A DNA stretch of 64,000 nt from Octopus bimaculoides. Its lineage: Eukaryota. This document shows, one piece after another, positions 2,802 to 56,654 of this stretch. The notes beneath the pieces are model-generated. The model did not search any database. It was given only the letters and a program-made list of their open reading frames with translations, and was not told where the DNA came from. The DNA is taken from positions 73,719,095 to 73,783,094 of the forward strand of contig NC_068983.1 of the NCBI RefSeq assembly GCF_001194135.2. Reading direction: 5' to 3'. Within the stretch, counting starts at the first letter, position 1. Every line of letters starts with the position of its first letter. The translations under genes and the position numbers were made by a program.

Positions 2802-2949
2802 GCACAGCATGGCTGTATGATAAGAAGTTTGCTTCCCAACCACATGGCACCTTGGGCCAGTGTCTTCTACAACAGTCTGGGGCTAACCAAAGCCTTGTGA
2901 GTGGATTTGGTAGACAGAAACTGAAACAAGCCCGTTGTATATATATATT

Positions 2950-3007
<58 letters not shown>

Positions 3008-3213
3008 TGTGTGTGTGTTTGTTCCCCAACCATCATTTGACAACCGATGTTGGTGTGTTTATGTCCCTGTAACTTAGTGGTTCAACAAAAGAGACCGATA
3101 GAATAAGTACCAGGCTTACAAAGAATAAGTCCTGGGGTTGATTTGTTCAACTAAAGGTGGTGCTCCAGCTTGGCCGCAGTCAAATGACAAAACAAGTAAA
3201 AGAATAAAAGAAT
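2802..3213 (+). mobile_element. Near full-length family-A SINE with central (TA)n(TG)n
   Basis: Head, CORE-like block, GGAAACTGAAA, microsatellite at 2937-3020, tail CAACCGATG...GAATAAGTAC...CAGTCAAATGAC...AAAAGAATAAAAGAA. Confidence 0.85.
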
Positions 3214-4240
3214 ACATCCTTGATCTTGGTAATCACTTTGACTTTGGTGTTGTAAGTAGAGCAGCTGGTGTCTTTCTCACACAATAATCTACAGGATTAC
3301 AATTGGGGGAATTAAAAAGCTAGAAACTGGGGCTGTTGAAGTTGTGGAAATTCTCTGACAACCATTTCTGACTCTTTCCTGAGGTATAGCAAAATGTGAA
3401 ATCCTGCTGCCACTCATATGGCCTTCCAGTAGCAACCCTCTAAAGCCAGGGATTGTCCACAGTCTCTAGGAGCTTCACATAGCTATCTGAGTGGAGTTTA
3501 AGGCCCTGTTCAAAGATGTTGTGTAACATGACATTACTCTTACTGGAGACACACCCAGACATCATGCACCTTGTGGGCATCACATGGATTCACATGGATT
3601 CTAGAAAAGCCATCCACCTGTTGTGCAACTGACAGAAGCTATTTATATCAGAGAATAACTAGATCATCCCCAGCTCAACAGGATGCCTCAGCTTGTTCAG
3701 AAGCTTGTTTGCCTTTGTCAGGCAGTTCTCCTTCGCCTTGGCTGTCAATTGCACTTCTCATATGAATGGTAGCGAAGGTCTTCATTCAGGGCCAGCTTCA
3801 TGGTGATGCCTCCCATTTCTCTTGCCAAAACCTGAAATCCCTTGCATGGATCTGCCATCACCTTATCCTGCAGTTGGATGAATTTTGGCATCTAGATGCA
3901 GTCTGAACACCTGCTGTGTCCCCTTCCTACTGGTCACAGCTTCATAGTCTATATTGCATCTGTGCATGTCATATCTTACAGCCTTTACAGTATTCACAAA
4001 GCATTGAGCAGCAGTCATGATGTTGGTACAATATTCAGATTGCTTCCAGTCCTCCATGTTAGCTGACTTTTTTCTCAACAACTTTGATCTTTATGCTCTC
4101 CAACACCATTGACTTTACCAAAATGTCAAGCTGTTGCTGAGAAATGTAGACAAAAGAAAAATTGTCAAATTTAGCCCAGACACTCTGAATATAGTAAAAA
4201 TAGAAATTTTAAATTCCTTGACACAGTAGTGTATATTTTT
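3214..4240 (-). pseudogene. Degenerate Tc1/mariner DD37D (maT-type) transposase
   Basis: Manual translation gives QGLKLHSDSYVKLLETV..GRPYEWQQD-FTFCYTSGKSQKWLSENFHNFNSPSF*LFNSPNCNPV-DY, with 37 residues between the last two Asp. Contains stops and frameshifts. Confidence 0.8.
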
Positions 4241-6811: not shown

Positions 6812-7215
6812 TGGTATGACCACAAATCCGAAGGCATCATCGAAAATAAAAATGCAAAGATCCTATGGAATTTTATGATTCAGTGCAACCATGATATAGA
6901 GAATAGGAAACCAGACATAGTCTTAATTGAGAAAGAAAACAAACTATGCTGGATCATAGATATAGCATGCCCAGCTGACAACAAGTTATGCGATAAGGAA
7001 GAAAGAAAAGTCGAGAGATATGGCAGGTTAGCTTGGGAAGTTAAGCAGTTGTGGTCGATGAAAAAGTTAGCAGTAGTACCAATAATTGTCGTAGCCCTGG
7101 GAACAGTGAGCAAAAATCTTGAGAAGTACATGGAACAAATAGGGGCTGCAATAAGGGTGGAGCACTTGCAGAAAACAGCATTGCTTGGAACCGCTCGAAT
7201 ACTCCGGAAGATGCT
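6812..7215 (+). mobile_element. R4/Dong-like LINE restriction-like endonuclease fragment
   Basis: Open frame WYDHKSEGIIENKNAKILWNFMIQC..NRKPDIVLIEK..WIIDIACPAD..KEERKVERYGRLAWEVKQLW..VVPIIVVALG..LQKTALLGTARILRKM (PD..D..K RLE motif). Begins right after (TAA)n and runs into a gap. Confidence 0.9.
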
Positions 7216-14734: not shown

Positions 14735-15156
14735 TTAATATATAAACTTCATTATATTTAAACAGTATTTTATTATTCTTGAAAAACTTGGTTTTATTGA
14801 TGAAGTGGAAACAGCTGTAATTTATAACATGAATTGAATTTATCATTTAATGATTAAATTATCTAATTATTCAATTTGTTGAAATATGGGAGTAGGAAAA
14901 CAGCCAACAACTGATGAAGGGTCGTTCTTTGTGTTGTTTGTCTTGTTTTCCATTTGTGTCTTTCGTTGTTAAAAAAAATAGTTCATATTCCATGTACTCG
15001 TACTTCGTATTTTTTGTTGTACATGTTTCGTGATGTCCAGTGCCCACATATGCATATATATATACATATAGATGTAAATATGTACATATGCGTATGTATA
15101 TATGCATATATATATATATATCTATAAATAATATGCGACAATTATTCAGTAGCCAT

Positions 15157-15217
15157 GATAAAACTCTGAGTTTTGGATGTCAGGGCAGAAACCCACACCG
15201 CCATCTCTTCAGTTATC
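15157..15217 (-). ncRNA. Hammerhead motif copy with mutated core (GAAA>AAAA)
   Basis: Same fold as 15539-15599; CGAAA changed to CAAAA, a CpG-type transition. Confidence 0.65.
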
Positions 15218-15538
15218 TGGCCATCGAAAAAATGCTATCTGTAATTTTCTCCAAAAGTTTCTTAAAGTATAGTTCCCTTGATGGTATAGGTATGCTTTTC
15301 ATAGAATAATCGATGTAGTAGGCATCCATATTGAATTCTTCTGCGGGACAGAGTTCTCAACTGATTTCTGGCGATTTTCCAAAATAAGCTTTATAAGCCC
15401 TTACGGAAAAATAGCAGTGTATAGGAGGTAACTTATTGATAGAAAAGGTAAGACAACAAAAGAAAGAAAGAGATCTTGATATTATGTAAATAGAGGAATT
15501 TATCTGTAAATAATAGGTGACAATTATTTAGTAGCCAT

Positions 15539-15599
15539 GATAAAACTCCGAGTTTCGGATGTCGGGGCGGAAACTCACACTGCCATCTCTTCAGTTATC
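15539..15599 (-). ncRNA. Type I hammerhead ribozyme motif with intact core
   Basis: 5'-GAUAA CUGAAGA GAUG(GCAG..CCGC CCCGA)CAUC C GAAA CUC G GAG UU/UUAUC-3'. Helix I GAUAA:UUAUC, helix III ACUC:GAGU with a 1-nt loop; predicted cleavage between 15544 and 15543. Confidence 0.8.
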
Positions 15600-15899
15600 T
15601 GGCCATCAAAAAAAGGCTATCCTCTATTTACATAATATTGAGGTCTCTTTCTTTCTTTTGTGGTCTTACCTTTTCTATCAATAAGTTACTTCCCGTAAAC
15701 CGCTATTTTTCCGTAAGGGCTAATACAGCTTATTTTGGAAAATTACCAGAAATCGGTTGAGGACTCTGCCCTGCAGAAGAATTCAATATGTACGCTTACT
15801 ACATCGATTATTCTATGAAAAGTATACCTATACCATCAAGGGAACTATACTCTAAGAAACTTTTGGAGAAAATTACAGATAGCATTTTTTCGATGGCCG

Positions 15900-15960
15900 G
15901 ATAACTGAAGAGCTGACGGTGTGAGTTTCCACCCCAATATCCAAAACTCGGAGTTTTATC
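15900..15960 (+). ncRNA. Hammerhead motif copy with mutated core in the inverted arm
   Basis: GATAA CTGAAGA ... CCAAAA CTCGGAG TT TTATC; helix II degraded. Confidence 0.6.
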
Positions 15961-16136
15961 ATAGCTGCCGAATAATTGTCACATATTATTTACAGATAAA
16001 TTCCTCTATTTACATAATATCGAGGTCACTTTCTTTCTTTTGTTGTCTTACCTTTTCTATCAATATATATATATATATTTATGATTTAACCACTGATGTA
16101 TATATATATATATATATATACATATATACACATATA

Positions 16137-16380
16137 TATATCATCGTCATCATCATCATCATCATCATCCTTTAATGTCCATTTTCCGTGCTGGCATGGG
16201 ATGGACGGTTTGACCAGAGCTGCACCAGGTTCCAGTCTGATTTAGCCTGGTTTCTACAGTTTGATGCCCTTCTAATGCCAACCACTTTACAGTGTGTACT
16301 GAGTGCTTTTAACATATCACCAATAGAGTGCTTTTATGTGGCACCAGCATAAACGCTTTTTACATGGCACTAGCACAGGA
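16137..16380 (-). mobile_element. Family-D repeat (RTE-type 3' tail with (GAT)n)
   Basis: Reverse complement contains GGTTGGCATTAGAAGGGCATC..CCATGCCAGCACGGAAAATGGACATTAAAG(GAT)n. Confidence 0.7.
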
Positions 16381-17386: not shown

Positions 17387-17956
17387 CATATATATGTGTG
17401 TAAGAGTAAATACCTTGTCATTGTCATCATTCTCATCGTTCTCTTTTTACATCAATAGATTTTCTTGCTTGGTCTAGCAATAGCATTTCTTGTATTTTAT
17501 TACCTTTCCATTGCAAATTTTTCTGTTGTTGTTCAGATGTTAGCATAAGCTGAAATCAGACCCAAAATCAATTCTCTCCTTGGTTACTGCACAAATTAGT
17601 AAGGTCAGATTTATCTTAGTCAACTTTGATTTACCTGGTATTTCCTGGCCTCTTATCTTTTATATGGCATTTATTATTTTCATTATTTTTTTCTTTTGAT
17701 TATCAAGGGTTTATTGTCTAGTCTCAGTATGGCTGAATGGTTAAGTAATTCACTTTGAAACCCCAAGATCTTGGGTTCAATCTCAGCCTGTGATATTTTG
17801 GGCAAAAGCTATTTTCTCAAACTTGGGTCAATTAATATCTTGTGAGTGAAATTAGGAAGACACAGATTATATAGAAGACTCTCAGGTAGCTTGCACCTGA
17901 ATTTAAAAATATACAATGTTGTCACATCTGTGCCATGCTGATTTGGATGGAGAACT

Positions 17957-18320
17957 ATTCTTTTACTCTTTTACTCTTTTACTTGTTTCAGTCATTTGAC
18001 TGCGGCCATGCTGGAGTACTGCCTTTTAGTCGAGCAAATCGACCCCGGGACTTATTCTTTGTAAGCCTAGTACTTATTCTATCGGTTTCTTTTGCCGAAC
18101 CGCTAAGTGACGGGGACATAAACACACCAGCATCGGTTGTCAAGCAATGCTAGGGGGACAAACACAGACACACAAACACAGACACACATATATATATACA
18201 TATATACGACGGGCTTCTCTCAGTTTCCATCTACCATTTGCCCAAGATGCCACGCAGTGGGACTGAACCCGGAACTATGTGGTTGGTGAGCAAGCTACTT
18301 ACCACACAGCCACTCCTGCA
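17957..18320 (-). mobile_element. Family-A SINE, internally deleted
   Basis: TTTTACTCTTTTACTTGTTTCAGTC tail end; head ends ACCACACAGCCACTCCTGC. Confidence 0.85.
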
Positions 18321-18699
18321 TCTATGTTTACCTTTTTATTGGAGGAAGCAGATATATCTGCTCAAAATTTCATTACCTTTGGCTGTGGAAAGCAGTCTTA
18401 TATTCCAATATACTTTTTGTTGCAGAATGTCTTATTTGAAAATGTTTTCTGTTGAAATATGTCTAACCCTTTCATTACCATATTTTTCTACTTTAGTTTC
18501 AATAAATTTCGAAAATAATGAAGAATTATAGGTGCAGGCATGGCTGTGTAGTTTCTTAACCACATAGTGCCAGGTTCAGTTCCACTACATGGCACATTGG
18601 GCAAGTGTCTTCTGTTATAGCCTCAAGCTAACCAAAGCCTTGTCTATGAAGCTGTAACAGCAGCAGCAATGAAATGGCACACATGCACGCATGCTCTCT

Positions 18700-18990: not shown

Positions 18991-19566
18991 CAGACTAGAG
19001 AACAGAAAAAATATATGCTGACTAACTCATTTTAGCCACAGCTGGAATCGTACAAGGGAAAGTAACTCTTCTTAACATCTCAGAAAGGTTTCTTTTTGTT
19101 TTGGATTTTTTCACCACTAAACTGACCAAGACTGTATATTTACCTCCATTAGTAAGGAAACTATGTGCTTTTGGCCAGGAGGTCTGGTGAGCTGCTTATA
19201 TTGCTAAGTGTAATAGTATATGAGAAACCAATGATATCTTTCTCACCAGTTATGTTCCATAATCAAGGATATACTACTTGAGTACATAACATTTATATAT
19301 ATCTATAATTTAGGACAATCAGTAAGTTGTCATAATTGTACTCGGAGTTTCAAATGCCAGAGCATATGTTTGTGTGTATGGGCATGTACATATACATGTT
19401 TGTGTGAGTGTGTATGTATGTAGACATTATGAATGCAGGAGGTTTTATGTCTATGCATTGTGAGAATATGGTTGCATGTATTTTTTATCTTTTATATTTT
19501 TTCCTACCTATTAGAGTAGCTTCCCTTTTATTCAACGTTTTTTTTTTTTATAGCGTCTATTGCCAT

Positions 19567-19629
19567 TAATAGCCAATGAGAATGCATCATAGTTCTTAGC
19601 TTTGGCATTTGAAACACCGAGTACTATTA
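19567..19629 (+). ncRNA. Degenerate type I hammerhead motif
   Basis: TAATAG CCAATGA GAATGC..GCATTT GAAA CACCGAG TA CTATTA. Helices I (6 bp) and II (6 bp) pair, but the core reads CCAAUGA instead of CUGAUGA. Confidence 0.55.
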
Positions 19630-19721
19630 TGACAACTTACTGATTATCCTAAACTATACATATATAAATATCCTCTATTTACTTAATACTGAGGTCTCAT
19701 TCTTTTGTTGTCACTTTTTTA

Positions 19722-19870
<149 letters not shown>

Positions 19871-28309: not shown

Positions 28310-29676
28310 AGACATTTGTGTGTTCCTTGAGTTAAAAGTTGAAATATGTGGAATAGCATTTTTTCTTTCTTTTTTGTACTTGGATGTTACTTTGATTGGC
28401 TTCCTGAGTTCCAAATTCTATCAGCTTTGTGGGATATTTTCTTATAAGTATTTTTCCATTTCGTCTAGTCTTCGGTCTTTTGTTCAAGAGTTTTACGCAA
28501 TTGTACAGAATCGTTTTGCTGGAGTGAATGGAATATACCTTTGAGTATTTCGGGGGACATTATGTATTAAGGTTGTATTGTCACGAGTTGGTGGGCTTAA
28601 ACTATATGTCCGTTCCTAGTATTGTATTTCAGTTTGTTATTAGAATGTGAAGGTTTATGTTTATGAGATTTTGAACTTTGTTTCAACCTGTCAATACTTT
28701 CCCTCCATAAAATGAAACAATCGTCTAGAAATCTCTTCCAGTTGTCTTTCAAGCAGCTATTCGACTCCATAAATACCGGAAGATTTTTTGTAGGTTCTTG
28801 GTTCACGGCATCCCATGATTAAGTTGACATGATGGAACAAATTTCGTTCCCATCGTTGTTCTTTGCTCCTGATTTTGGTGAAAGGCAGTGATACCAAATA
28901 TGAAATAATTGTTTTCTAAAGTGAATTGGGGGCTATCTACAATAAATTTTCTGTCTATGCATTTTGGTATTTCGTAAGAAAGTGAATGTAGACAATATTT
29001 TATTGCTTCGATTCCATAATCGGTAGGAACGCTGTTGTACAGTTTTACATCATGTATGACAATATAGGTATTTTCGTTTACTGTATTAGGTAGATGGTTG
29101 AGTATATCAAAACCATCTCGTCTAAAGTTCTTTATGCATTTGAGGAAAGGTTTCAGCAGAATGTCTAGGAAATCACTTAAGTCATGTGTTTCACACGATG
29201 AGCCTGCTGCATTGGGTCGCAATTTTAGATCTGATGGTTGCGGGATGTTCACACAATTTGTTTATGTTCCTTCATATGTTTCATTCATTAGTTTATTCTT
29301 ATTATTTGAGGTAGTTCATAGAAGTTGCTTGTTATATATTTGAAGTTTGTTGGGTGGTCCAGCTCTTTATAAGTTAAAGAATTTCGGTTTGGAAGTAATA
29401 ATTTTCATAATTATCTTCACAGTAAATATTATCTTGTAACATACTCAATACCATATTCTTGTAATAACCTGTACCCACATTAACAACTGAACCTTCTTTA
29501 TCAGTTTCTTCGATGACTATATACTTTTCATATTATAAATCTGTTAAGTGGGTACATTGTTGTCTACTAAAGTTAGATTTTATTTGCTGTTTTCCGTTTT
29601 TCTATGAAAGTTTGATTATGCTCGCAGAATTAATCGAGAGCCGCATTACTTGTGCACGCGCACAAACACACACACA

Positions 29677-29712
<36 letters not shown>

Positions 29713-32030: not shown

Positions 32031-32047
32031 ATCGTTATAGCAAACAT

Positions 32048-32207
32048 TACTTGTTTCAGTCATTTGACTGCGGCCATGCTGGAGCACCGCCTTTAGTAGA
32101 ACAAATCGAACCCAGGACTTATTCTTTGAAAGCCTAGTACTTATTCTATCGTACTCTTTTATGGGGACGTAAACACACCAGCATCGGTTGTCAAGCGATG
32201 GTGGGGA

Positions 32208-32286
<79 letters not shown>

Positions 32287-32414
32287 GACGGGCTTTTTTT
32301 TTAGTTTCCGTCAACTAAATCTACTCACAAGGATTTAGTCGGCCTGAGGCTATAGTAGAAGACACTTGCCCAAGGTGCCACGCAACTTCTTATCACACAG
32401 CCACTCCTGCGCCT
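32048..32414 (-). mobile_element. Family-A SINE
   Basis: Tail, (CA)n centre at 32210-32283, 5' half with deletion. Confidence 0.85.
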
Positions 32415-34489: not shown

Positions 34490-34871
34490 TACGAAGGGGT
34501 ATTCAAAAGAAACCAGAAATTTGCAATGTTATTTTATTCATTTAGTTTTACATGTTAACACTTTTATCGCCTTCAAAGTATTCTCCATTTGAAGCAATGC
34601 ATCGGTTCAGACTCATTGGCCACTGTTCGTAGCAGTGCTGGAACTCTTGCGAAGTGATGCCTTTTAGCACCTCCGTCGTTTTGTTTCTTCACCGGCTTCC
34701 GTAGTACCAGCTTTGATTACCAGTGTTGACCTTCGAAAACGGGTCCCAATCAATTTCCAACTGTTCTTTCAGTTCACGACACGCATTCAGTCGCAACTGC
34801 TTTTGATCTTCTGTGAGCAAGCGAGGCGTAAATTTTGCTGTAACTCTTTTCATTCGCAATTCCTCGCTCAA
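34490..34871 (-). mobile_element. Internally deleted mariner with 3' TIR
   Basis: LRMKRVTAKFTPRLLTEDQKQLR..TGNQSWYYG joined directly to EFQHCYEQW..NRCIASNGEYFEGD; TIR TA|CGAAGGGGTATTCAAAAG. Confidence 0.85.
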
Positions 34872-39264: not shown

Positions 39265-39665
39265 GATATATTCTTTTATTCTTTTACTGGAGCACCGCCT
39301 TAAAAGTTTTTTTAAAATTGAACGCCTAGTACTTATTCTATCGGTCTATTTTGCCGAACCGCTTGGTTACGGGGACGTAAACACACCAACATCGGTTATC
39401 AAGCAATGGTGGGAGGACAAACATAGACACAAAGATACACACACACTTATACACACACACGCACACACACACACGCACACACACACACACACACATCTAT
39501 ACCCGACGGGTTTCTTTCAGTTTCCGTCTACCAAATCCACTCGCAAGGCTTCGATCGGCTTGAGGCTATAGGAGAATGCAGTTGCCCATGGTGCCACTCA
39601 GTGGGACTGACCCGGACCGTTGTGGTTGGGAAGCAAACTTCTTACCACACAGCCACGCCTTCGCA
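39265..39665 (-). mobile_element. Family-A SINE
   Basis: Tail, (CA) centre, 5' half with deletion. Confidence 0.75.
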
Positions 39666-40936
39666 TATATATATATATATATANNNNNNNNNNNNNNNNN
39701 NNNNNNNNNNNNNNNNNNNNNNNNNNNNNNNNNNNNNNNNNNNNNNNNNNNNNNNNNNNNNNNNNNNNNNNNNNNNNNNNNNNNNNNNNNNNNNNNNNNN
39801 NNNNNNNNNNNNNNNNNNNNNNNNNNNNNNNNNNNNNNNNNNNNNNNNNNNNNNNNNNNNNNNNNNNNNNNNNNNNNNNNNNNNNNNNNNNNNNNNNNNN
39901 NNNNNNNNNNNNNNNNNNNNNNNNNNNNNNNNNNNNNNNNNNNNNNNNNNNNNNNNNNNNNNNNNNNNNNNNNNNNNNNNNNNNNNNNNNNNNNNNNNNN
40001 NNNNNNNNNNNNNNNNNNNNNNNNNNNNNNNNNNNNNNNNNNNNNNNNNNNNNNNNNNNNNNNNNNNNNNNNNNNNNNNNNNNNNNNNNNNNNNNNNNNN
40101 NNNNNNNNNNNNNNNNNNNNNNNNNNNTATACATACATACATAGAGAAAGAAGAAGAAGAAGAAGGAGAGAGAGAGAGAGAGAGGGGGGGGTAGAGAGAA
40201 GGAGGGAAGAAAAAGAGGTTTACTTCCACACAAGTAGGAAAACAAGAAAATTGGTTTTGAAATTGAAAATGCACTTATACTTATGTCTTAAAACGAATTA
40301 TACTCTTTTACTCTTTTACTTGTTTCAGTCTTTTGACTGTGGCCATGCTGGAGCACCGCCTTTATAGTTAATTTTAAAAATATATATTAAAACACCATAC
40401 CGGTTTCTTTAATTTAAATTTGTTTTTCAATGGTAAATAAAAATATCAAGAAAAATATAAAGAAAGTGAATGCACAAGAGAAAAACATTCGCACAAGATA
40501 AAACAAACATTCACATAAAGCCAAATGTTTAATAAGTTTGACAGCTAATAAGAAATTATGAAAGTTCAAATGGCCGATATATCTCATAGCTATAATACGT
40601 TAGAAATTTGAAAGTTCAATAAGTTTCATAGCTATAGATTATGCTGGCAGTTAGACATAAAGAAGATTTCAAAGTATAATTATTAATTTTTTGTTTTGTT
40701 TTTGTGTATTGGTGGAATCGTTGGTCGTTTGCTTTACTCATTCGAATGTGTACCATTCGACGGGATTCCATAAAGTTTCCGTCTTCTCGATTTCATTCAG
40801 AAGGCTTGGATAGACCCAGGGCTATGGTGCAAGACACTTGCCCAAAATTCCACGTAGTATAATCCAACCCGAGAACTCGTGATTGCAAAGCTAACTTCCA
40901 CAACCTTTGGGCATACAATATTTATCTATACATATA

Positions 40937-55743: not shown

Positions 55744-55951
55744 GAACAGAAAAAAAATGGATGATCATAGCTGGAATGTGTAAACCAGTGATTCTTAAGC
55801 ATTTTTTTGCAGCCCCACTGTTGTTATTCTTAGCACCCACCTATGTGGTGAGTGAGGTATCACAACTAAACTAACATACCATGGATAATGATTTATAAAT
55901 TTTACTCTAAAAATGGATTGTATTGTATAAACTTTTAACAGTGAAATGATT

Positions 55952-56358
55952 CAGAAGTGGCTGTGTGGTAAGTAGCTTGCTTACCAACCACATGGTTCCG
56001 GGTTCATTCCCACTGCGTAGTATCTTGGGCAAGTGTCTTCTACTATAGCCTCGGGCCGACCAAAGCCTTGTGAGTGGATCTGGTAGACGGAAACTGAAAG
56101 AAGCTTGTCGTATATATGTATATATATATATATGTGTGTATGTGTTTGTGTATCTGTGTTTGTTCCCCAACATCGCTTGACAACCGATGCTGGTGTGTTT
56201 ACGTCCCCGTAACTTAGCGGTTCGGCAAAAGAGACTGATAGAATAAGTACTAGGCTTCCAAAAGAATAAGTCCTGGGGTTGATTTGCACGACTAAAAGGC
56301 AGTGCCCCAGCATGGCCACAACCAAATGACTGAGACAAGTAAAAGAGTAAAAGAGTAA
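55952..56358 (+). mobile_element. Full-length family-A SINE
   Basis: All modules present; ends AAAAGAGTAAAAGAGT. Confidence 0.9.
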
Positions 56359-56654
56359 AGACAAAAGTTATCAATTTACTTTTTGAAAGCTAATGTCTTC
56401 TCTGCACCTGATGAGATCTCATTATACTTTAATAACCGTTACTGCTTTTAATATAATTATTACTACAGGTAGAATTTAGCATGTTAATTATGTCACCCCC
56501 NNNNNNNNNNNNNNNNNNNNNNNNNNNNNNNNNNNNNNNNNNNNNNNNNNNNNNNNNNNNNNNNNNNNNNNNNNNNNNNNNNNNNNNNNNNNNNNNNNNN
56601 NNNNNNNNNNNNNNNNNNNNNNNNNNNNNNNNNNNNNNNNNNNNNNNNNNNNNN

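What the first reader, a model, noticed from the sequence alone, without database searches (positions are those of the whole stretch)
15119..16065. Retrozyme-like 382-nt hammerhead element: candidate ribozyme-processed circular RNA family in a cephalopod-type genome
Seen: an AT-rich, ORF-less 382-bp monomer repeated about 1.3 times (15119-15620), followed immediately by about 1.16 inverted copies (15621-16065), with (TA)n on both flanks. Each monomer holds one type I HHR. The copy at 15539-15599 has a complete core (CUGAAGA, GAAA, GUU), a 5-bp helix I and a helix III (ACUC-G-GAGU) whose 1-nt loop suggests activity as a dimer. Two HHRs lie exactly 382 nt apart on the minus strand. Established: tandem 150-400-bp monomers with type I HHRs (non-LTR retrozymes) produce circRNAs in several animals and are linked to Penelope-like elements. 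Inference: this is a member of such a family, able to release 382-nt monomers. I cannot tell from memory whether it is already described in octopus.
Basis: partly seen in the sequence, partly recalled or inferred. Interest (0 to 1): 0.9.

Follow-up and report, generated by a model that had tools for sequence, protein, structure and literature searches.

The report
Decayed Penelope-type hammerhead repeat in octopus
This is an old, mutated insertion of a small non-coding "hitch-hiker" retroelement that carries a hammerhead ribozyme and was pasted into a TA microsatellite of an octopus genome, most likely by Penelope-like retrotransposon machinery; it is a new example of a known kind and is probably no longer active at this locus.

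Summary
The repeat anatomy is real. A 382-bp non-coding unit is present as 1.3 copies (15119-15621, sense on the minus strand). It is joined head-to-head to 1.16 copies (15620-16065, sense on the plus strand), and TA microsatellite lies on both sides. Each unit carries a type I hammerhead-like motif, but only one of three (15539-15599, minus) keeps the CUGANGA/GAAA core. The other two have G12 changed to A through CpG decay. All three have an extra unpaired C next to helix II, and Rfam does not recognise any of them.

The architecture is the signature of Penelope-like element (PLE) integration:
- inverted, 5'-truncated, longer-than-unit arms;
- two fixed 3' ends, 43 and 110 nt after the ribozyme cut, so there is a "tail" on one side only;
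- a (TA)n target.

A second, diverged insertion at 19291-19725 has the same two ends and compensatory changes in helix I. A PLE reverse-transcriptase relic lies at 28600-29252. The host is an octopod.

Best reading: a decayed copy of a PLE-mobilised non-autonomous hammerhead element, i.e. an animal "non-LTR retrozyme". This locus cannot release 382-nt monomers. It is a new member of a known kind, and interest is modest.

The parts
15041..15118 (.). Left flank: TA-rich microsatellite (target DNA)
   Evidence: Sequence; TRF rows 15054-15134
15119..15621 (-). Left arm, sense on the minus strand. It covers unit positions 258-382, then 1 to about 378. Its 5' end lies at the centre of the locus, and its 3' end ('...TTATTTATAGATA') abuts (TA)n 43 nt after the ribozyme cut site. 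This is the short arm, without the tail.
   Evidence: blastn, alignment, nhmmer
15157..15217 (-). Hammerhead copy L2. The core is inactivated (CGAAA changed to CAAAA, i.e. G12 to A), and four CpGs in or next to the motif are lost.
   Evidence: (found only with [AG]AAA)
15539..15599 (-). Hammerhead copy L1, the only copy with an intact core. It has helix I GAUAA/UUAUC (plus an outer GGCC/GGCU), CUGAAGA, a 31-nt helix II domain with one unpaired C before G12, GAAA, helix III CUC-G-GAG, and U16.1-U17. The predicted cut lies between 15544 and 15543.
15620..16065 (+). Right arm, sense on the plus strand. It covers unit positions 1-382, then 1-63. Its 5' end lies at the centre of the locus and overlaps the left arm by 1-2 nt. 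Its 3' end ('...CTTTTCTATCAATA') abuts (TA)n 110 nt after the cut site. This is the long arm, with the tail.
15900..15960 (+). Hammerhead copy R1. It carries G12 to A, and helix II is weakened (GCUG.../...AUAUC).
15999..16065 (+). The 'tail': the 67 nt (unit positions 379-382 plus 1-63) present at the 3' end of the right arm but absent from the 3' end of the left arm.
   Evidence: alignment A1; the same asymmetry is seen in the second insertion
16066..16141 (.). Right flank: (TA)n microsatellite, followed by (ATC)n.
19291..19364 (-). Second, diverged insertion (F2), left arm. It is 5'-truncated inside helix II, and it ends at the position homologous to the short 3' end of F1 ('...TTATAGATA' followed by TATATAAATG).
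   Evidence: nhmmer E=0.0096, profile E=2e-19, inverted repeat 19291-19363/19599-19671 at 89%, alignment A1
19541..19725 (+). F2 right arm. The hammerhead remnant is at 19568-19628: helix I AAUAG/CUAUU, core CCAAUGA (CUGAUGA with two transitions), helix II GAAUGC/GCAUUU without a bulge, and GAAAC. The tail follows, and the arm ends at the long 3' end next to (ATT)n(TA)n at 19726-19870.
   Evidence: nhmmer E=1.1e-6, profile E=1.6e-41
28600..29252 (-). Frameshifted relic of a Penelope-like reverse transcriptase. It is a candidate relative of the autonomous partner and is not part of the element itself.
   Evidence: 16 homologues, most with RVT_1. It is 38% identical (E=4e-38) to the RT of a complete RT+GIY-YIG element in locus L001.

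Best explanation
The locus is one old integration event of a 382-nt non-coding, hammerhead-bearing, non-autonomous retroelement. In current terms this is an animal 'non-LTR retrozyme', meaning a non-autonomous derivative of Penelope-like elements (PLEs). The integration was carried out by a PLE reverse transcriptase/GIY-YIG endonuclease in a (TA)n microsatellite of an octopod genome.

Proposed mechanism. Each step is marked shown (S) or inferred (I).
1. A multimeric or circular RNA of 382-nt units was the template (I). Each arm is longer than one unit and crosses the same 382-to-1 junction (S).
2. The endonuclease cut both strands of an AT-rich target, and each 3'-OH primed reverse transcription (I, by analogy with the anole PLE studied in vitro, PMC11167929). 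This gives two cDNAs whose 3' ends face outwards into (TA)n and whose 5' ends meet head-to-head at 15620/15621 (S).
3. Reverse transcription started at two fixed internal sites, 43 and 110 nt downstream of the hammerhead cut. One arm therefore carries a 67-nt 'tail' and the other does not (S for the ends, I for the cause). A second, diverged insertion at 19291-19725 has the same two ends (S).
4. In source copies, the hammerhead would cut multimeric transcripts into units. It would probably act as a double hammerhead, because helix III is CUC-G-GAG with a 1-nt loop. The units might then be circularised (I, not testable here).
5. Since insertion the copies have diverged by about 10-13%, mostly by transitions and half at CpG sites (S). 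This destroyed G12 in two of the three ribozymes (S). The locus is therefore a relic and cannot excise a 382-nt unit. If it is transcribed across both arms it would simply fold into a hairpin with a stem of about 400 bp (S for the fold).
For: Repeat geometry.

Hammerhead evidence:
- The descriptor hits once in the window, against 4/500 shuffles.
- Helix I covaries between the two insertions at 2 of 5 pairs (G-C to A-U and A-U to G-C). Overall, 97% of cells are paired, against 29-50% when the partners are slid.

Two independent insertions share both 3' ends:
- alignment A1;
- nhmmer;
- inverted arms of F2;
- a 22-base invariant pattern found 5 times against 0 expected, though the pattern was derived from these same sequences.

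The (TA)n flanks are shown.

Published PLE hallmarks match:
- a partial tandem plus an adjacent inverted 5'-truncated copy, a tail on one end, a (TA)n bias, and hammerheads in the repeated part (Craig et al.);
- cleavage and extension of both strands, two internal RT start sites that define the tail, and a preference for AT-rich targets (Frangieh et al. PMC11167929);
- PLE hammerheads with a long helix II, a short 4-5 bp helix I, a small palindromic helix III and bulges, and pairs 100-700 bp apart on opposite strands (Cervera & de la Pena 2014).

Positive control: an ENA contig (L001) carries a complete RT+GIY-YIG PLE related to the window's RT relic. It also has a head-to-head pair of identical minimal hammerheads. 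Its short arm ends 46 nt after the cut at (AT)12, and its long arm about 131 nt after the cut at (TA)44.

Decay: JC distance 0.105-0.131 between arms, 31/37 differences are transitions and 18/37 are CpG-type. PLEs are abundant in octopus genomes (PMC13282606 and PMC8967140).
Against: - No autonomous PLE carrying this hammerhead-plus-tail module was found, and no octopus genome could be searched.
- The tail is 67 nt, longer than the 30-40 nt reported for PLEs.
- The hammerhead has an unpaired C between helix II and G12. I found no report of an unpaired base at that position, and it may never have been catalytically competent.
- Rfam models do not score it. They also miss the textbook minimal hammerheads of L001.
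- Family size is unknown: there are only two insertions in 57 kb of non-gap sequence, and no matches in JGI metagenomes or in the protein collection.
- The unit RNA is not unusually structured (z=-0.2), unlike the 'highly self-paired' retrozyme circles described in the literature.
Confidence: 0.78

Rival explanations
1. An active retrozyme locus. Transcription of the minus strand yields a dimeric transcript, two hammerheads cut it, and a 382-nt RNA is released and circularised.
For: Two hammerhead-like motifs lie exactly 382 nt apart on the minus strand. The unit size and GC content match mussel retrozymes of 350-390 bp (PMC7229834). The self-duplex of helix III is stable (-12.1 kcal/mol).
Against: The 15157-15217 copy has G12 changed to A, and so does the plus-strand copy. 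In a double hammerhead each active site takes its core from one copy, so only one of the two sites could be cut. The locus fails the published working criterion of two consecutive units with complete hammerheads (Li et al. 2026). The CpG-dominated 10-13% divergence shows neutral decay. Any transcript spanning both arms is predicted to form a 400-bp hairpin that buries two of the motifs.
Confidence: 0.07
2. A 5'-truncated autonomous PLE, or a solo pseudo-LTR. On this view the 382-bp unit is only the terminal non-coding part of a coding element of about 3 kb.
For: Hammerheads of this style sit in PLE pseudo-LTRs. Most genomic minimal hammerheads are reported as truncated PLEs. A PLE RT relic is in the window.
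Against: Both arms read through the same 382-to-1 junction back into the same unit, so the template repeated every 382 nt and not every 3 kb. No reading frame of the unit has a protein relative. The sequence upstream of the hammerhead is non-coding rather than the end of an RT-endonuclease ORF.
Confidence: 0.1
3. A DNA-level foldback element or a MITE-like transposon with long inverted repeats and a TA target duplication. On this view the hammerhead resemblance is incidental.
For: The inverted repeats are 397 nt long, and TA lies at both borders.
Against: The outer termini are not inverted copies of each other. The right arm carries 67 nt with no counterpart at the left end, and the arms are circularly permuted, longer-than-unit copies. 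The same asymmetry recurs in F2. The hammerhead is improbable by chance (4/500), and its helix I covaries.
Confidence: 0.03
4. The locus now functions as a hairpin-RNA gene, for example as a source of small RNAs or as an ADAR substrate, whatever its origin.
For: The predicted hairpin has an energy of -589 kcal/mol with z=-39.7.
Against: There is no expression evidence. The arms have drifted apart at a neutral-looking rate with a CpG bias. Any PLE head-to-head insertion has this property by construction.
Confidence: 0.04

Closest known systems
Metazoan non-LTR retrozymes (Cervera & de la Pena 2020, PMC7229834). Li, Clavereau & Pollet 2026 (bioRxiv 10.64898/2026.07.22.740005) regard them as non-autonomous PLE derivatives.
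   Same: A short (170-400 bp), low-GC, non-coding unit with one type I hammerhead, repeated head-to-tail. Mussel units are 350-390 bp. They co-occur with PLEs in the same genome.
   Different: Only 1.3 and 1.16 units are present, arranged as an inverted pair rather than an array. Only one hammerhead is intact. The hammerhead is of the PLE 'variant' style (long helix II, 5-bp helix I, a bulge), not the canonical 6-bp/4-bp type with loop-loop contacts. The unit RNA is not unusually self-paired (z=-0.2). No expression or circularity data are available.
Canonical endonuclease-positive Penelope-like elements (Neptune/Poseidon-type) and their pseudo-LTR hammerheads (Cervera & de la Pena 2014, PMC4209133; Craig et al. 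2021; Frangieh et al. 2024, PMC11167929)
   Same: The insertion architecture matches: a partial tandem, an adjacent inverted 5'-truncated copy, a tail on one end, and an AT-rich/(TA)n target. The hammerhead lies shortly upstream of the reverse-transcription start sites. The hammerhead style also matches. The same geometry is seen next to a complete PLE in locus L001.
   Different: There is no RT/GIY-YIG ORF, the unit is 382 bp, and the tail is 67 nt rather than 30-40 nt. No sequence identity to a known PLE terminus could be tested.
Satellite-type hammerhead repeats that work as double hammerheads: newt satellite 2, Schistosoma Sm-alpha and cave-cricket pDo500 (cited in PMC7229834 and PMC4209133)
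   Same: A type I hammerhead with a minimal, nearly palindromic helix III that needs a second copy to form a stable helix.
   Different: Those are long tandem arrays or SINE-like dispersed copies with canonical cores. This is a two-armed single insertion with a non-canonical unpaired C beside the core.

Membership tests
Hammerhead ribozyme, type I | Conserved core CUGANGA ... GAAA ... U-H at a three-helix junction, with the open end in helix I | tested here: met
   Met by 15539-15599(-) only. The copies at 15157-15217(-) and 15900-15960(+) have AAAA in place of GAAA (G12 to A).
Hammerhead ribozyme, type I | Helices I, II and III in canonical register next to the core | tested here: inconclusive
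   Helix I has 5 bp plus 4 outer bp and covaries with F2 at 2 of 5 pairs. Helix II pairs only if one C before G12 is left unpaired (searches compared), whereas F2 has no such bulge. Helix III is CUC-G-GAG, whose 1-nt loop is impossible in a monomer. That leaves 3 bp with a triloop, or an 8-bp intermolecular helix with a G-G mismatch (-12.1 kcal/mol).
Hammerhead ribozyme, type I | Match to Rfam hammerhead covariance models | tested here: not met
   There is no hammerhead hit at gathering score or at E<=10 on 15000-16200. As a control, the clear minimal hammerheads of L001 are also missed at E<=1, so this test is weak for PLE-style motifs.
Hammerhead ribozyme, type I | Self-cleavage | not testable with these tools
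   This needs in vitro transcription of monomer and dimer constructs.
Metazoan non-LTR retrozyme | Head-to-tail repeats of a 170-400 bp, low-GC, non-coding unit with a type I hammerhead, and no LTRs | tested here: met
   The unit is 382 bp, with 1.3 and 1.16 copies. GC is 35.6%. There are no ORF relatives.
Metazoan non-LTR retrozyme | [quoted passage not shown] 2026) | tested here: not met
   Of the two consecutive minus-strand motifs, only one is complete.
Metazoan non-LTR retrozyme | Unit RNA highly self-paired | tested here: not met
   The 382-nt unit cut at the ribozyme sites folds at -72 kcal/mol, against -71 +/- 5 for shuffles (z=-0.2). This copy is decayed, so the test is only indicative.
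Metazoan non-LTR retrozyme | Expressed as abundant circular RNA | not testable with these tools
   No transcriptome data are accessible.
Metazoan non-LTR retrozyme | Dispersed multi-copy family in the genome | tested here: inconclusive
   A second diverged insertion lies in the same window. No octopus genome can be searched, and there were no hits in JGI metagenomes, in 20 kb of O. vulgaris or in the protein collection.
Penelope-like element insertion (integration signature) | A partial tandem plus an adjacent inverted 5'-truncated copy | tested here: met
   for F1, and for F2. The definition comes from Craig et al..
Penelope-like element insertion (integration signature) | Two alternative fixed 3' ends, i.e. 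a 'tail' on one side only | tested here: met
   F1 ends 43 and 110 nt after the cut. F2 ends at the homologous positions. The tail is 67 nt, against the published 30-40 nt.
Penelope-like element insertion (integration signature) | An AT-rich or (TA)n microsatellite target with no clear target duplication | tested here: met
   with the literature.
Penelope-like element (autonomous) | A single ORF with a telomerase-like RT and a GIY-YIG endonuclease | tested here: not met
   The element has no coding capacity, so it is not an autonomous PLE. A PLE RT relic lies 12.5 kb away.

The most novel reading that the evidence does not exclude
Octopus genomes harbour a live family of 382-nt hammerhead units that are cut, circularised and abundantly expressed. 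These units would be copied by a (TA)n-targeting Neptune-like PLE that primes on both target strands at two fixed sites downstream of the ribozyme. The ribozyme would work despite an unpaired C next to G12, which would be an undescribed tolerated variant of the hammerhead core environment. This would extend the 'retrozymes are PLE parasites' model from vertebrates to cephalopods, and would give it a concrete integration footprint.
Probability: 0.3. Interest if true: 0.5.

Novelty: new member of a known kind. Interest (0 to 1): 0.3.

Why it matters
Hammerhead-bearing small retroelements and their dependence on Penelope-like elements are already established in cnidarians, bivalves, amphibians and other vertebrates. 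I found no description of them in cephalopods in the searchable literature, so this fills a taxonomic gap rather than opening a new category.

The useful point is mechanistic. Two independent insertions of a non-coding 382-bp unit show the full PLE integration footprint: both-strand priming, two fixed internal start sites 43 and 110 nt after the ribozyme, and a (TA)n target. This is direct structural support for the recent proposal that animal retrozymes are mobilised by PLEs. It also argues that multimeric or circular RNA, rather than ribozyme-trimmed monomers, was the template, because no end coincides with the cut site.

For genome annotation, it shows that such loci are missed by both Rfam and default tandem-repeat searches.

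Tried and rejected
1. Rfam found no hammerhead family, either over the whole window at gathering score or over 15000-16200 at E<=10. The only hits were microsatellite-driven mir-297/466-type artefacts.
2. A strict hammerhead descriptor with no bulge gave no hit. This led me to the unpaired C.
3. I tried to recover other genomic copies through spurious gene calls, using a search with all stop-free frames of the unit concatenated. It gave no hit. This also argues against the unit being the N-terminus of a PLE ORF.
4. Two JGI metagenome scans with 22-base family-invariant patterns found nothing.
5. Twenty kb of Octopus vulgaris chromosome (L004) holds no copy.
6. Pfam on the window's RT-like ORFs gave no significant hit. 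Homology search and comparison with L001 were needed.
7. I asked whether the intact hammerhead copy is selectively preserved. It keeps 4/4 CpGs inside the motif but, by my reading of the alignment, has lost about 3 other CpGs in its 125 nt, so I see no evidence for selection.
8. MFE folding of single hammerhead segments does not give the hammerhead shape (-19 kcal/mol for the MFE against -6.3 for the hammerhead-shaped fold). This is uninformative, as is usual for hammerheads.
9. I considered and rejected a DNA transposon or MITE, a solo pseudo-LTR, and a chance motif (see rival explanations).
10. I did not build a full-length mended consensus of the unit, because it was not needed.
Full report
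**1. What is in the sequence**

Window 15119-16065 holds a 382-bp unit in two blocks of opposite orientation.
- Direct repeats 15101-15239/15483-15621 and 15620-15683/16002-16065 are both spaced 382 bp apart.
- The two blocks form inverted arms 15101-15497 and 15620-16016, which are 397 nt long and 89% complementary.
- I used 15621-16002 as the reference unit. The right block then covers unit positions 1-382 followed by 1-63.
- The left block, read on the minus strand, covers unit positions 258-382 followed by 1 to about 378.
- The two blocks meet head-to-head at 15620/15621 with a 1-2 nt overlap.
- Their outer (3') ends run straight into TA-rich microsatellite at 15041-15118 and 16066-16141.

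The element has no ORF above about 40 aa of its own. A protein search with all of its stop-free frames found nothing. GC is 35.6%, in a window of 32.5%.

**2. The hammerhead**

All three unit copies carry a type I hammerhead-like segment of 61 nt. The minus-strand copy at 15539-15599 reads:

GAUAA-CUGAAGA-[31 nt helix II domain]-GAAA-CUC-G-GAG-U-U/UUAUC

- **Dead cores.** The copies at 15157-15217(-) and 15900-15960(+) read CAAAAC instead of CGAAAC. G12 has become A by CpG decay. From established hammerhead biochemistry (my knowledge), G12 is essential for catalysis.
- **An unpaired C.** In all three copies the helix II strands GAUG.../...CAUC leave one extra C unpaired directly before G12. 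A descriptor without bulges finds nothing. With a 1-nt bulge allowed it finds exactly this site, and 4 of 500 dinucleotide shuffles of the window give any hit.
- **A minimal helix III.** Its 1-nt loop cannot form in a monomer. Two copies could instead form an 8-bp intermolecular helix with a G-G mismatch (-12.1 kcal/mol). This is the classic double-hammerhead situation described for PLE and satellite hammerheads (PMC4209133).
- **No Rfam match.** No Rfam hammerhead model scores the region, even at E<=10. The unmistakable minimal hammerheads I later found in locus L001 are also missed, so this negative result says little.

The style of the motif is what Cervera and de la Pena described for PLE hammerheads rather than for canonical retrozyme ones: a long helix II, a 5-bp helix I, a tiny near-palindromic helix III and a bulge.

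**3. A second insertion, and what it shows**

Sensitive searches with the arms found a diverged relative 3.6 kb downstream.
- Its minus-strand arm is at 19291-19364 and its plus-strand arm at about 19541-19725 (nhmmer E=0.0096 and 1.1e-6; profile E=2e-19 and 1.6e-41).
- The two arms form a 73-nt, 89% inverted repeat.
- It is again head-to-head, and again lies in AT-rich DNA, with (ATT)n(TA)n at 19726-19870.
- In the alignment, its minus-strand arm stops at the same homologous position as the left arm of the first element (...UAUAGAUA).
- Its plus-strand arm runs on through the same extra segment and stops at the same place as the first element's right arm.

So two independent events share two distinct 3' ends, about 43 and about 110 nt downstream of the predicted ribozyme cut. 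The 67-nt difference is present on one side only. The 5' ends are all different, which is the pattern expected from truncation.

The second element's hammerhead remnant has helix I AAUAG/CUAUU instead of GAUAA/UUAUC. That gives compensatory changes at two of five pairs. Overall, 97% of cells are paired, against 29-50% when the partners are slid. Its helix II (GAAUGC/GCAUUU) has no bulge. The sample is small, but it supports a real hammerhead fold in the ancestor of both elements. It also suggests that the unpaired C is a peculiarity of the first element's lineage.

**4. Why this is a Penelope-type integration**

The published hallmarks of PLE insertions are:
- partial tandems with an adjacent inverted 5'-truncated copy;
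- a short 'tail' present at only one end;
- a bias for microsatellites, (TA)n in particular;
- hammerheads in the repeated part (Craig et al.).

In vitro, an anole PLE protein cleaves and extends both strands of an AT-rich target. It starts reverse transcription at two adjacent internal sites roughly 85-92 nt downstream of the hammerhead cut (my arithmetic from the reported ORF coordinates). The sequence between those two sites is the tail. Hammerhead cleavage is not needed for insertion in that system (PMC11167929). Every one of these features is present here, apart from the longer tail of 67 nt.

The window also contains a frameshifted RT relic at 28600-29252(-). It is 38% identical (E=4e-38) to the RT of a complete element in ENA contig L001. 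That element has RVT_1 followed by a CX5CxxC motif and a GIY-YIG domain.

Next to that element, L001 shows the same footprint in pristine form.
- It has two identical minimal hammerheads on opposite strands (2161-2204 and 2444-2487).
- They sit in 99% identical inverted arms.
- The short arm ends 46 nt after the cut at (AT)12.
- The long arm ends about 131 nt after the cut at (TA)44.

The organism behind L001 is unknown, so it serves only as an architectural control.

**5. Why it is non-autonomous and unit-sized**

Both arms cross the same junction from unit position 382 to position 1 and continue into the same unit. The template therefore repeated every 382 nt. No frame has protein relatives. 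This separates the element from a truncated coding PLE and places it with the animal 'non-LTR retrozymes'. Those have units of 170-400 bp, with mussel units of 350-390 bp (PMC7229834). A 2026 preprint argues that they are non-autonomous PLE derivatives.

None of the four arm ends coincides with the ribozyme cut site. This fits a multimeric or circular template better than a ribozyme-trimmed linear monomer (inference).

**6. State of this locus**

- The arms differ by JC 0.105-0.131. Of 37 differences, 31 are transitions and 18 are of CpG type.
- Assume the arms were identical at insertion and take the octopus repeat clock of PMC13282606, where JC 0.065 corresponds to about 18 My and 0.09 to about 25 My. 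The event is then roughly 15-18 My old. This is a rough figure, and CpG decay inflates it.
- Only one hammerhead is intact. By the working criterion of Li et al. (two consecutive complete hammerheads) this is not an active retrozyme.
- In a double hammerhead, each catalytic site draws its core from one copy and its scissile bond from the other (reasoning from the Forster-Symons model). At most one cut could occur, so no unit can be released.
- The unit RNA is no more structured than shuffled sequence (z=-0.2).
- A transcript across both arms is predicted to form a 400-bp hairpin (-589 kcal/mol, z=-39.7). That is a by-product of the architecture.

**7. Host**

A SINE-derived ORF of the window (55907-56374, minus strand) has a single relative in the 5.8-billion-protein collection, a hypothetical protein of Octopus vulgaris. 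Twenty kb around that gene shares roughly 400-bp repeats with the window at up to 90% identity. The window therefore comes from an octopod. Its many N gaps next to microsatellites indicate a short-read draft assembly.

**8. Novelty and verdict**

PLEs are known to be abundant in octopus genomes. Hammerhead retroelements are known in other molluscs. I found no paper in the searchable library describing hammerhead or retrozyme elements in cephalopods.

This is a new member of a known kind, and the locus itself is a relic. Its main value is as a clean structural example that a 382-nt non-coding hammerhead unit was integrated with the full PLE footprint. Family size, the autonomous partner, expression, circularity and catalytic competence could not be tested with the tools available.

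Noticed in passing
window 19291-19870: A second, diverged head-to-head insertion of a related hammerhead element. It has the same two 3' ends as the first and is followed by (ATT)n(TA)n. A 60-nt TG/TA-rich filler (19366-19425) lies between its arms.
   Followed up: yes
window 28600-29252 (minus strand): A frameshifted relic of a Penelope-like reverse transcriptase, 38% identical to the RT of a complete RT+GIY-YIG element. Its 5' side runs into a (CA)n repeat and an assembly gap near 29700.
   Followed up: partly
L001 2101-2703 (ENA ERZ25073814, contig ctg9413): A pristine head-to-head pair of identical minimal hammerheads (UUGAAACU-CUGAUGA-A-GGCGAAAGCC-GAAA-GCGC-UU/AGUUUCAA) in 99% inverted arms between (AT)12 and (TA)44. 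It lies directly upstream of a complete PLE ORF. A weaker CUGAAGA...GAAA-CGCG-UU motif lies after the ORF, about 59 nt before another TA run. The organism is unknown.
   Followed up: partly
window 15620-15621 compared with 15119: The 5' end of the right arm (unit position 382/1) falls within about 4 nt of the unit position at which the short arms end (about 378). This could be coincidence (roughly a 3% chance), or it could hint that the template RNA had a natural end there.
   Followed up: no
window 15554-15566 (minus strand, UCCGAAACUCGGA): In the first element, the extra C plus G12-A13 can pair with the 3' strand of helix III (UCCGA/UCGGA). This gives a competing hairpin that hides the GAAA box and dominates the MFE fold. 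The second element lacks this complementarity.
   Followed up: no
window 55953-56355, 17956-18325, 2845-3222, 32047-32384, 39318-39669: Copies of a repeat of about 400 bp (apparently an octopus SINE) shared with Octopus vulgaris chromosome OX597836.1 at 73-90% identity. SINE-derived peptides such as 'SFGCGHAGAPPFS' recur in the ORF list.
   Followed up: partly
window 15041-15130 and 16087-16149: Below-threshold Rfam matches to mir-297, mir-466, mir-3149 and similar families are produced by the (TA)/(CA)-rich microsatellites. They are artefacts.
   Followed up: yes
window 6875-7192 (+) and 34689-34860 (-): Two ORF fragments abut assembly gaps. From memory, they look like the C-terminus of a non-LTR retrotransposon protein and a mariner-type transposase fragment. 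Pfam gave no hit for either piece.
   Followed up: partly
whole window: About 6.7 kb of N gaps, nearly all bordered by (TA)n or (CA)n microsatellites. Repeat copies that insert into such microsatellites, like this family, are likely to be under-assembled here.
   Followed up: no
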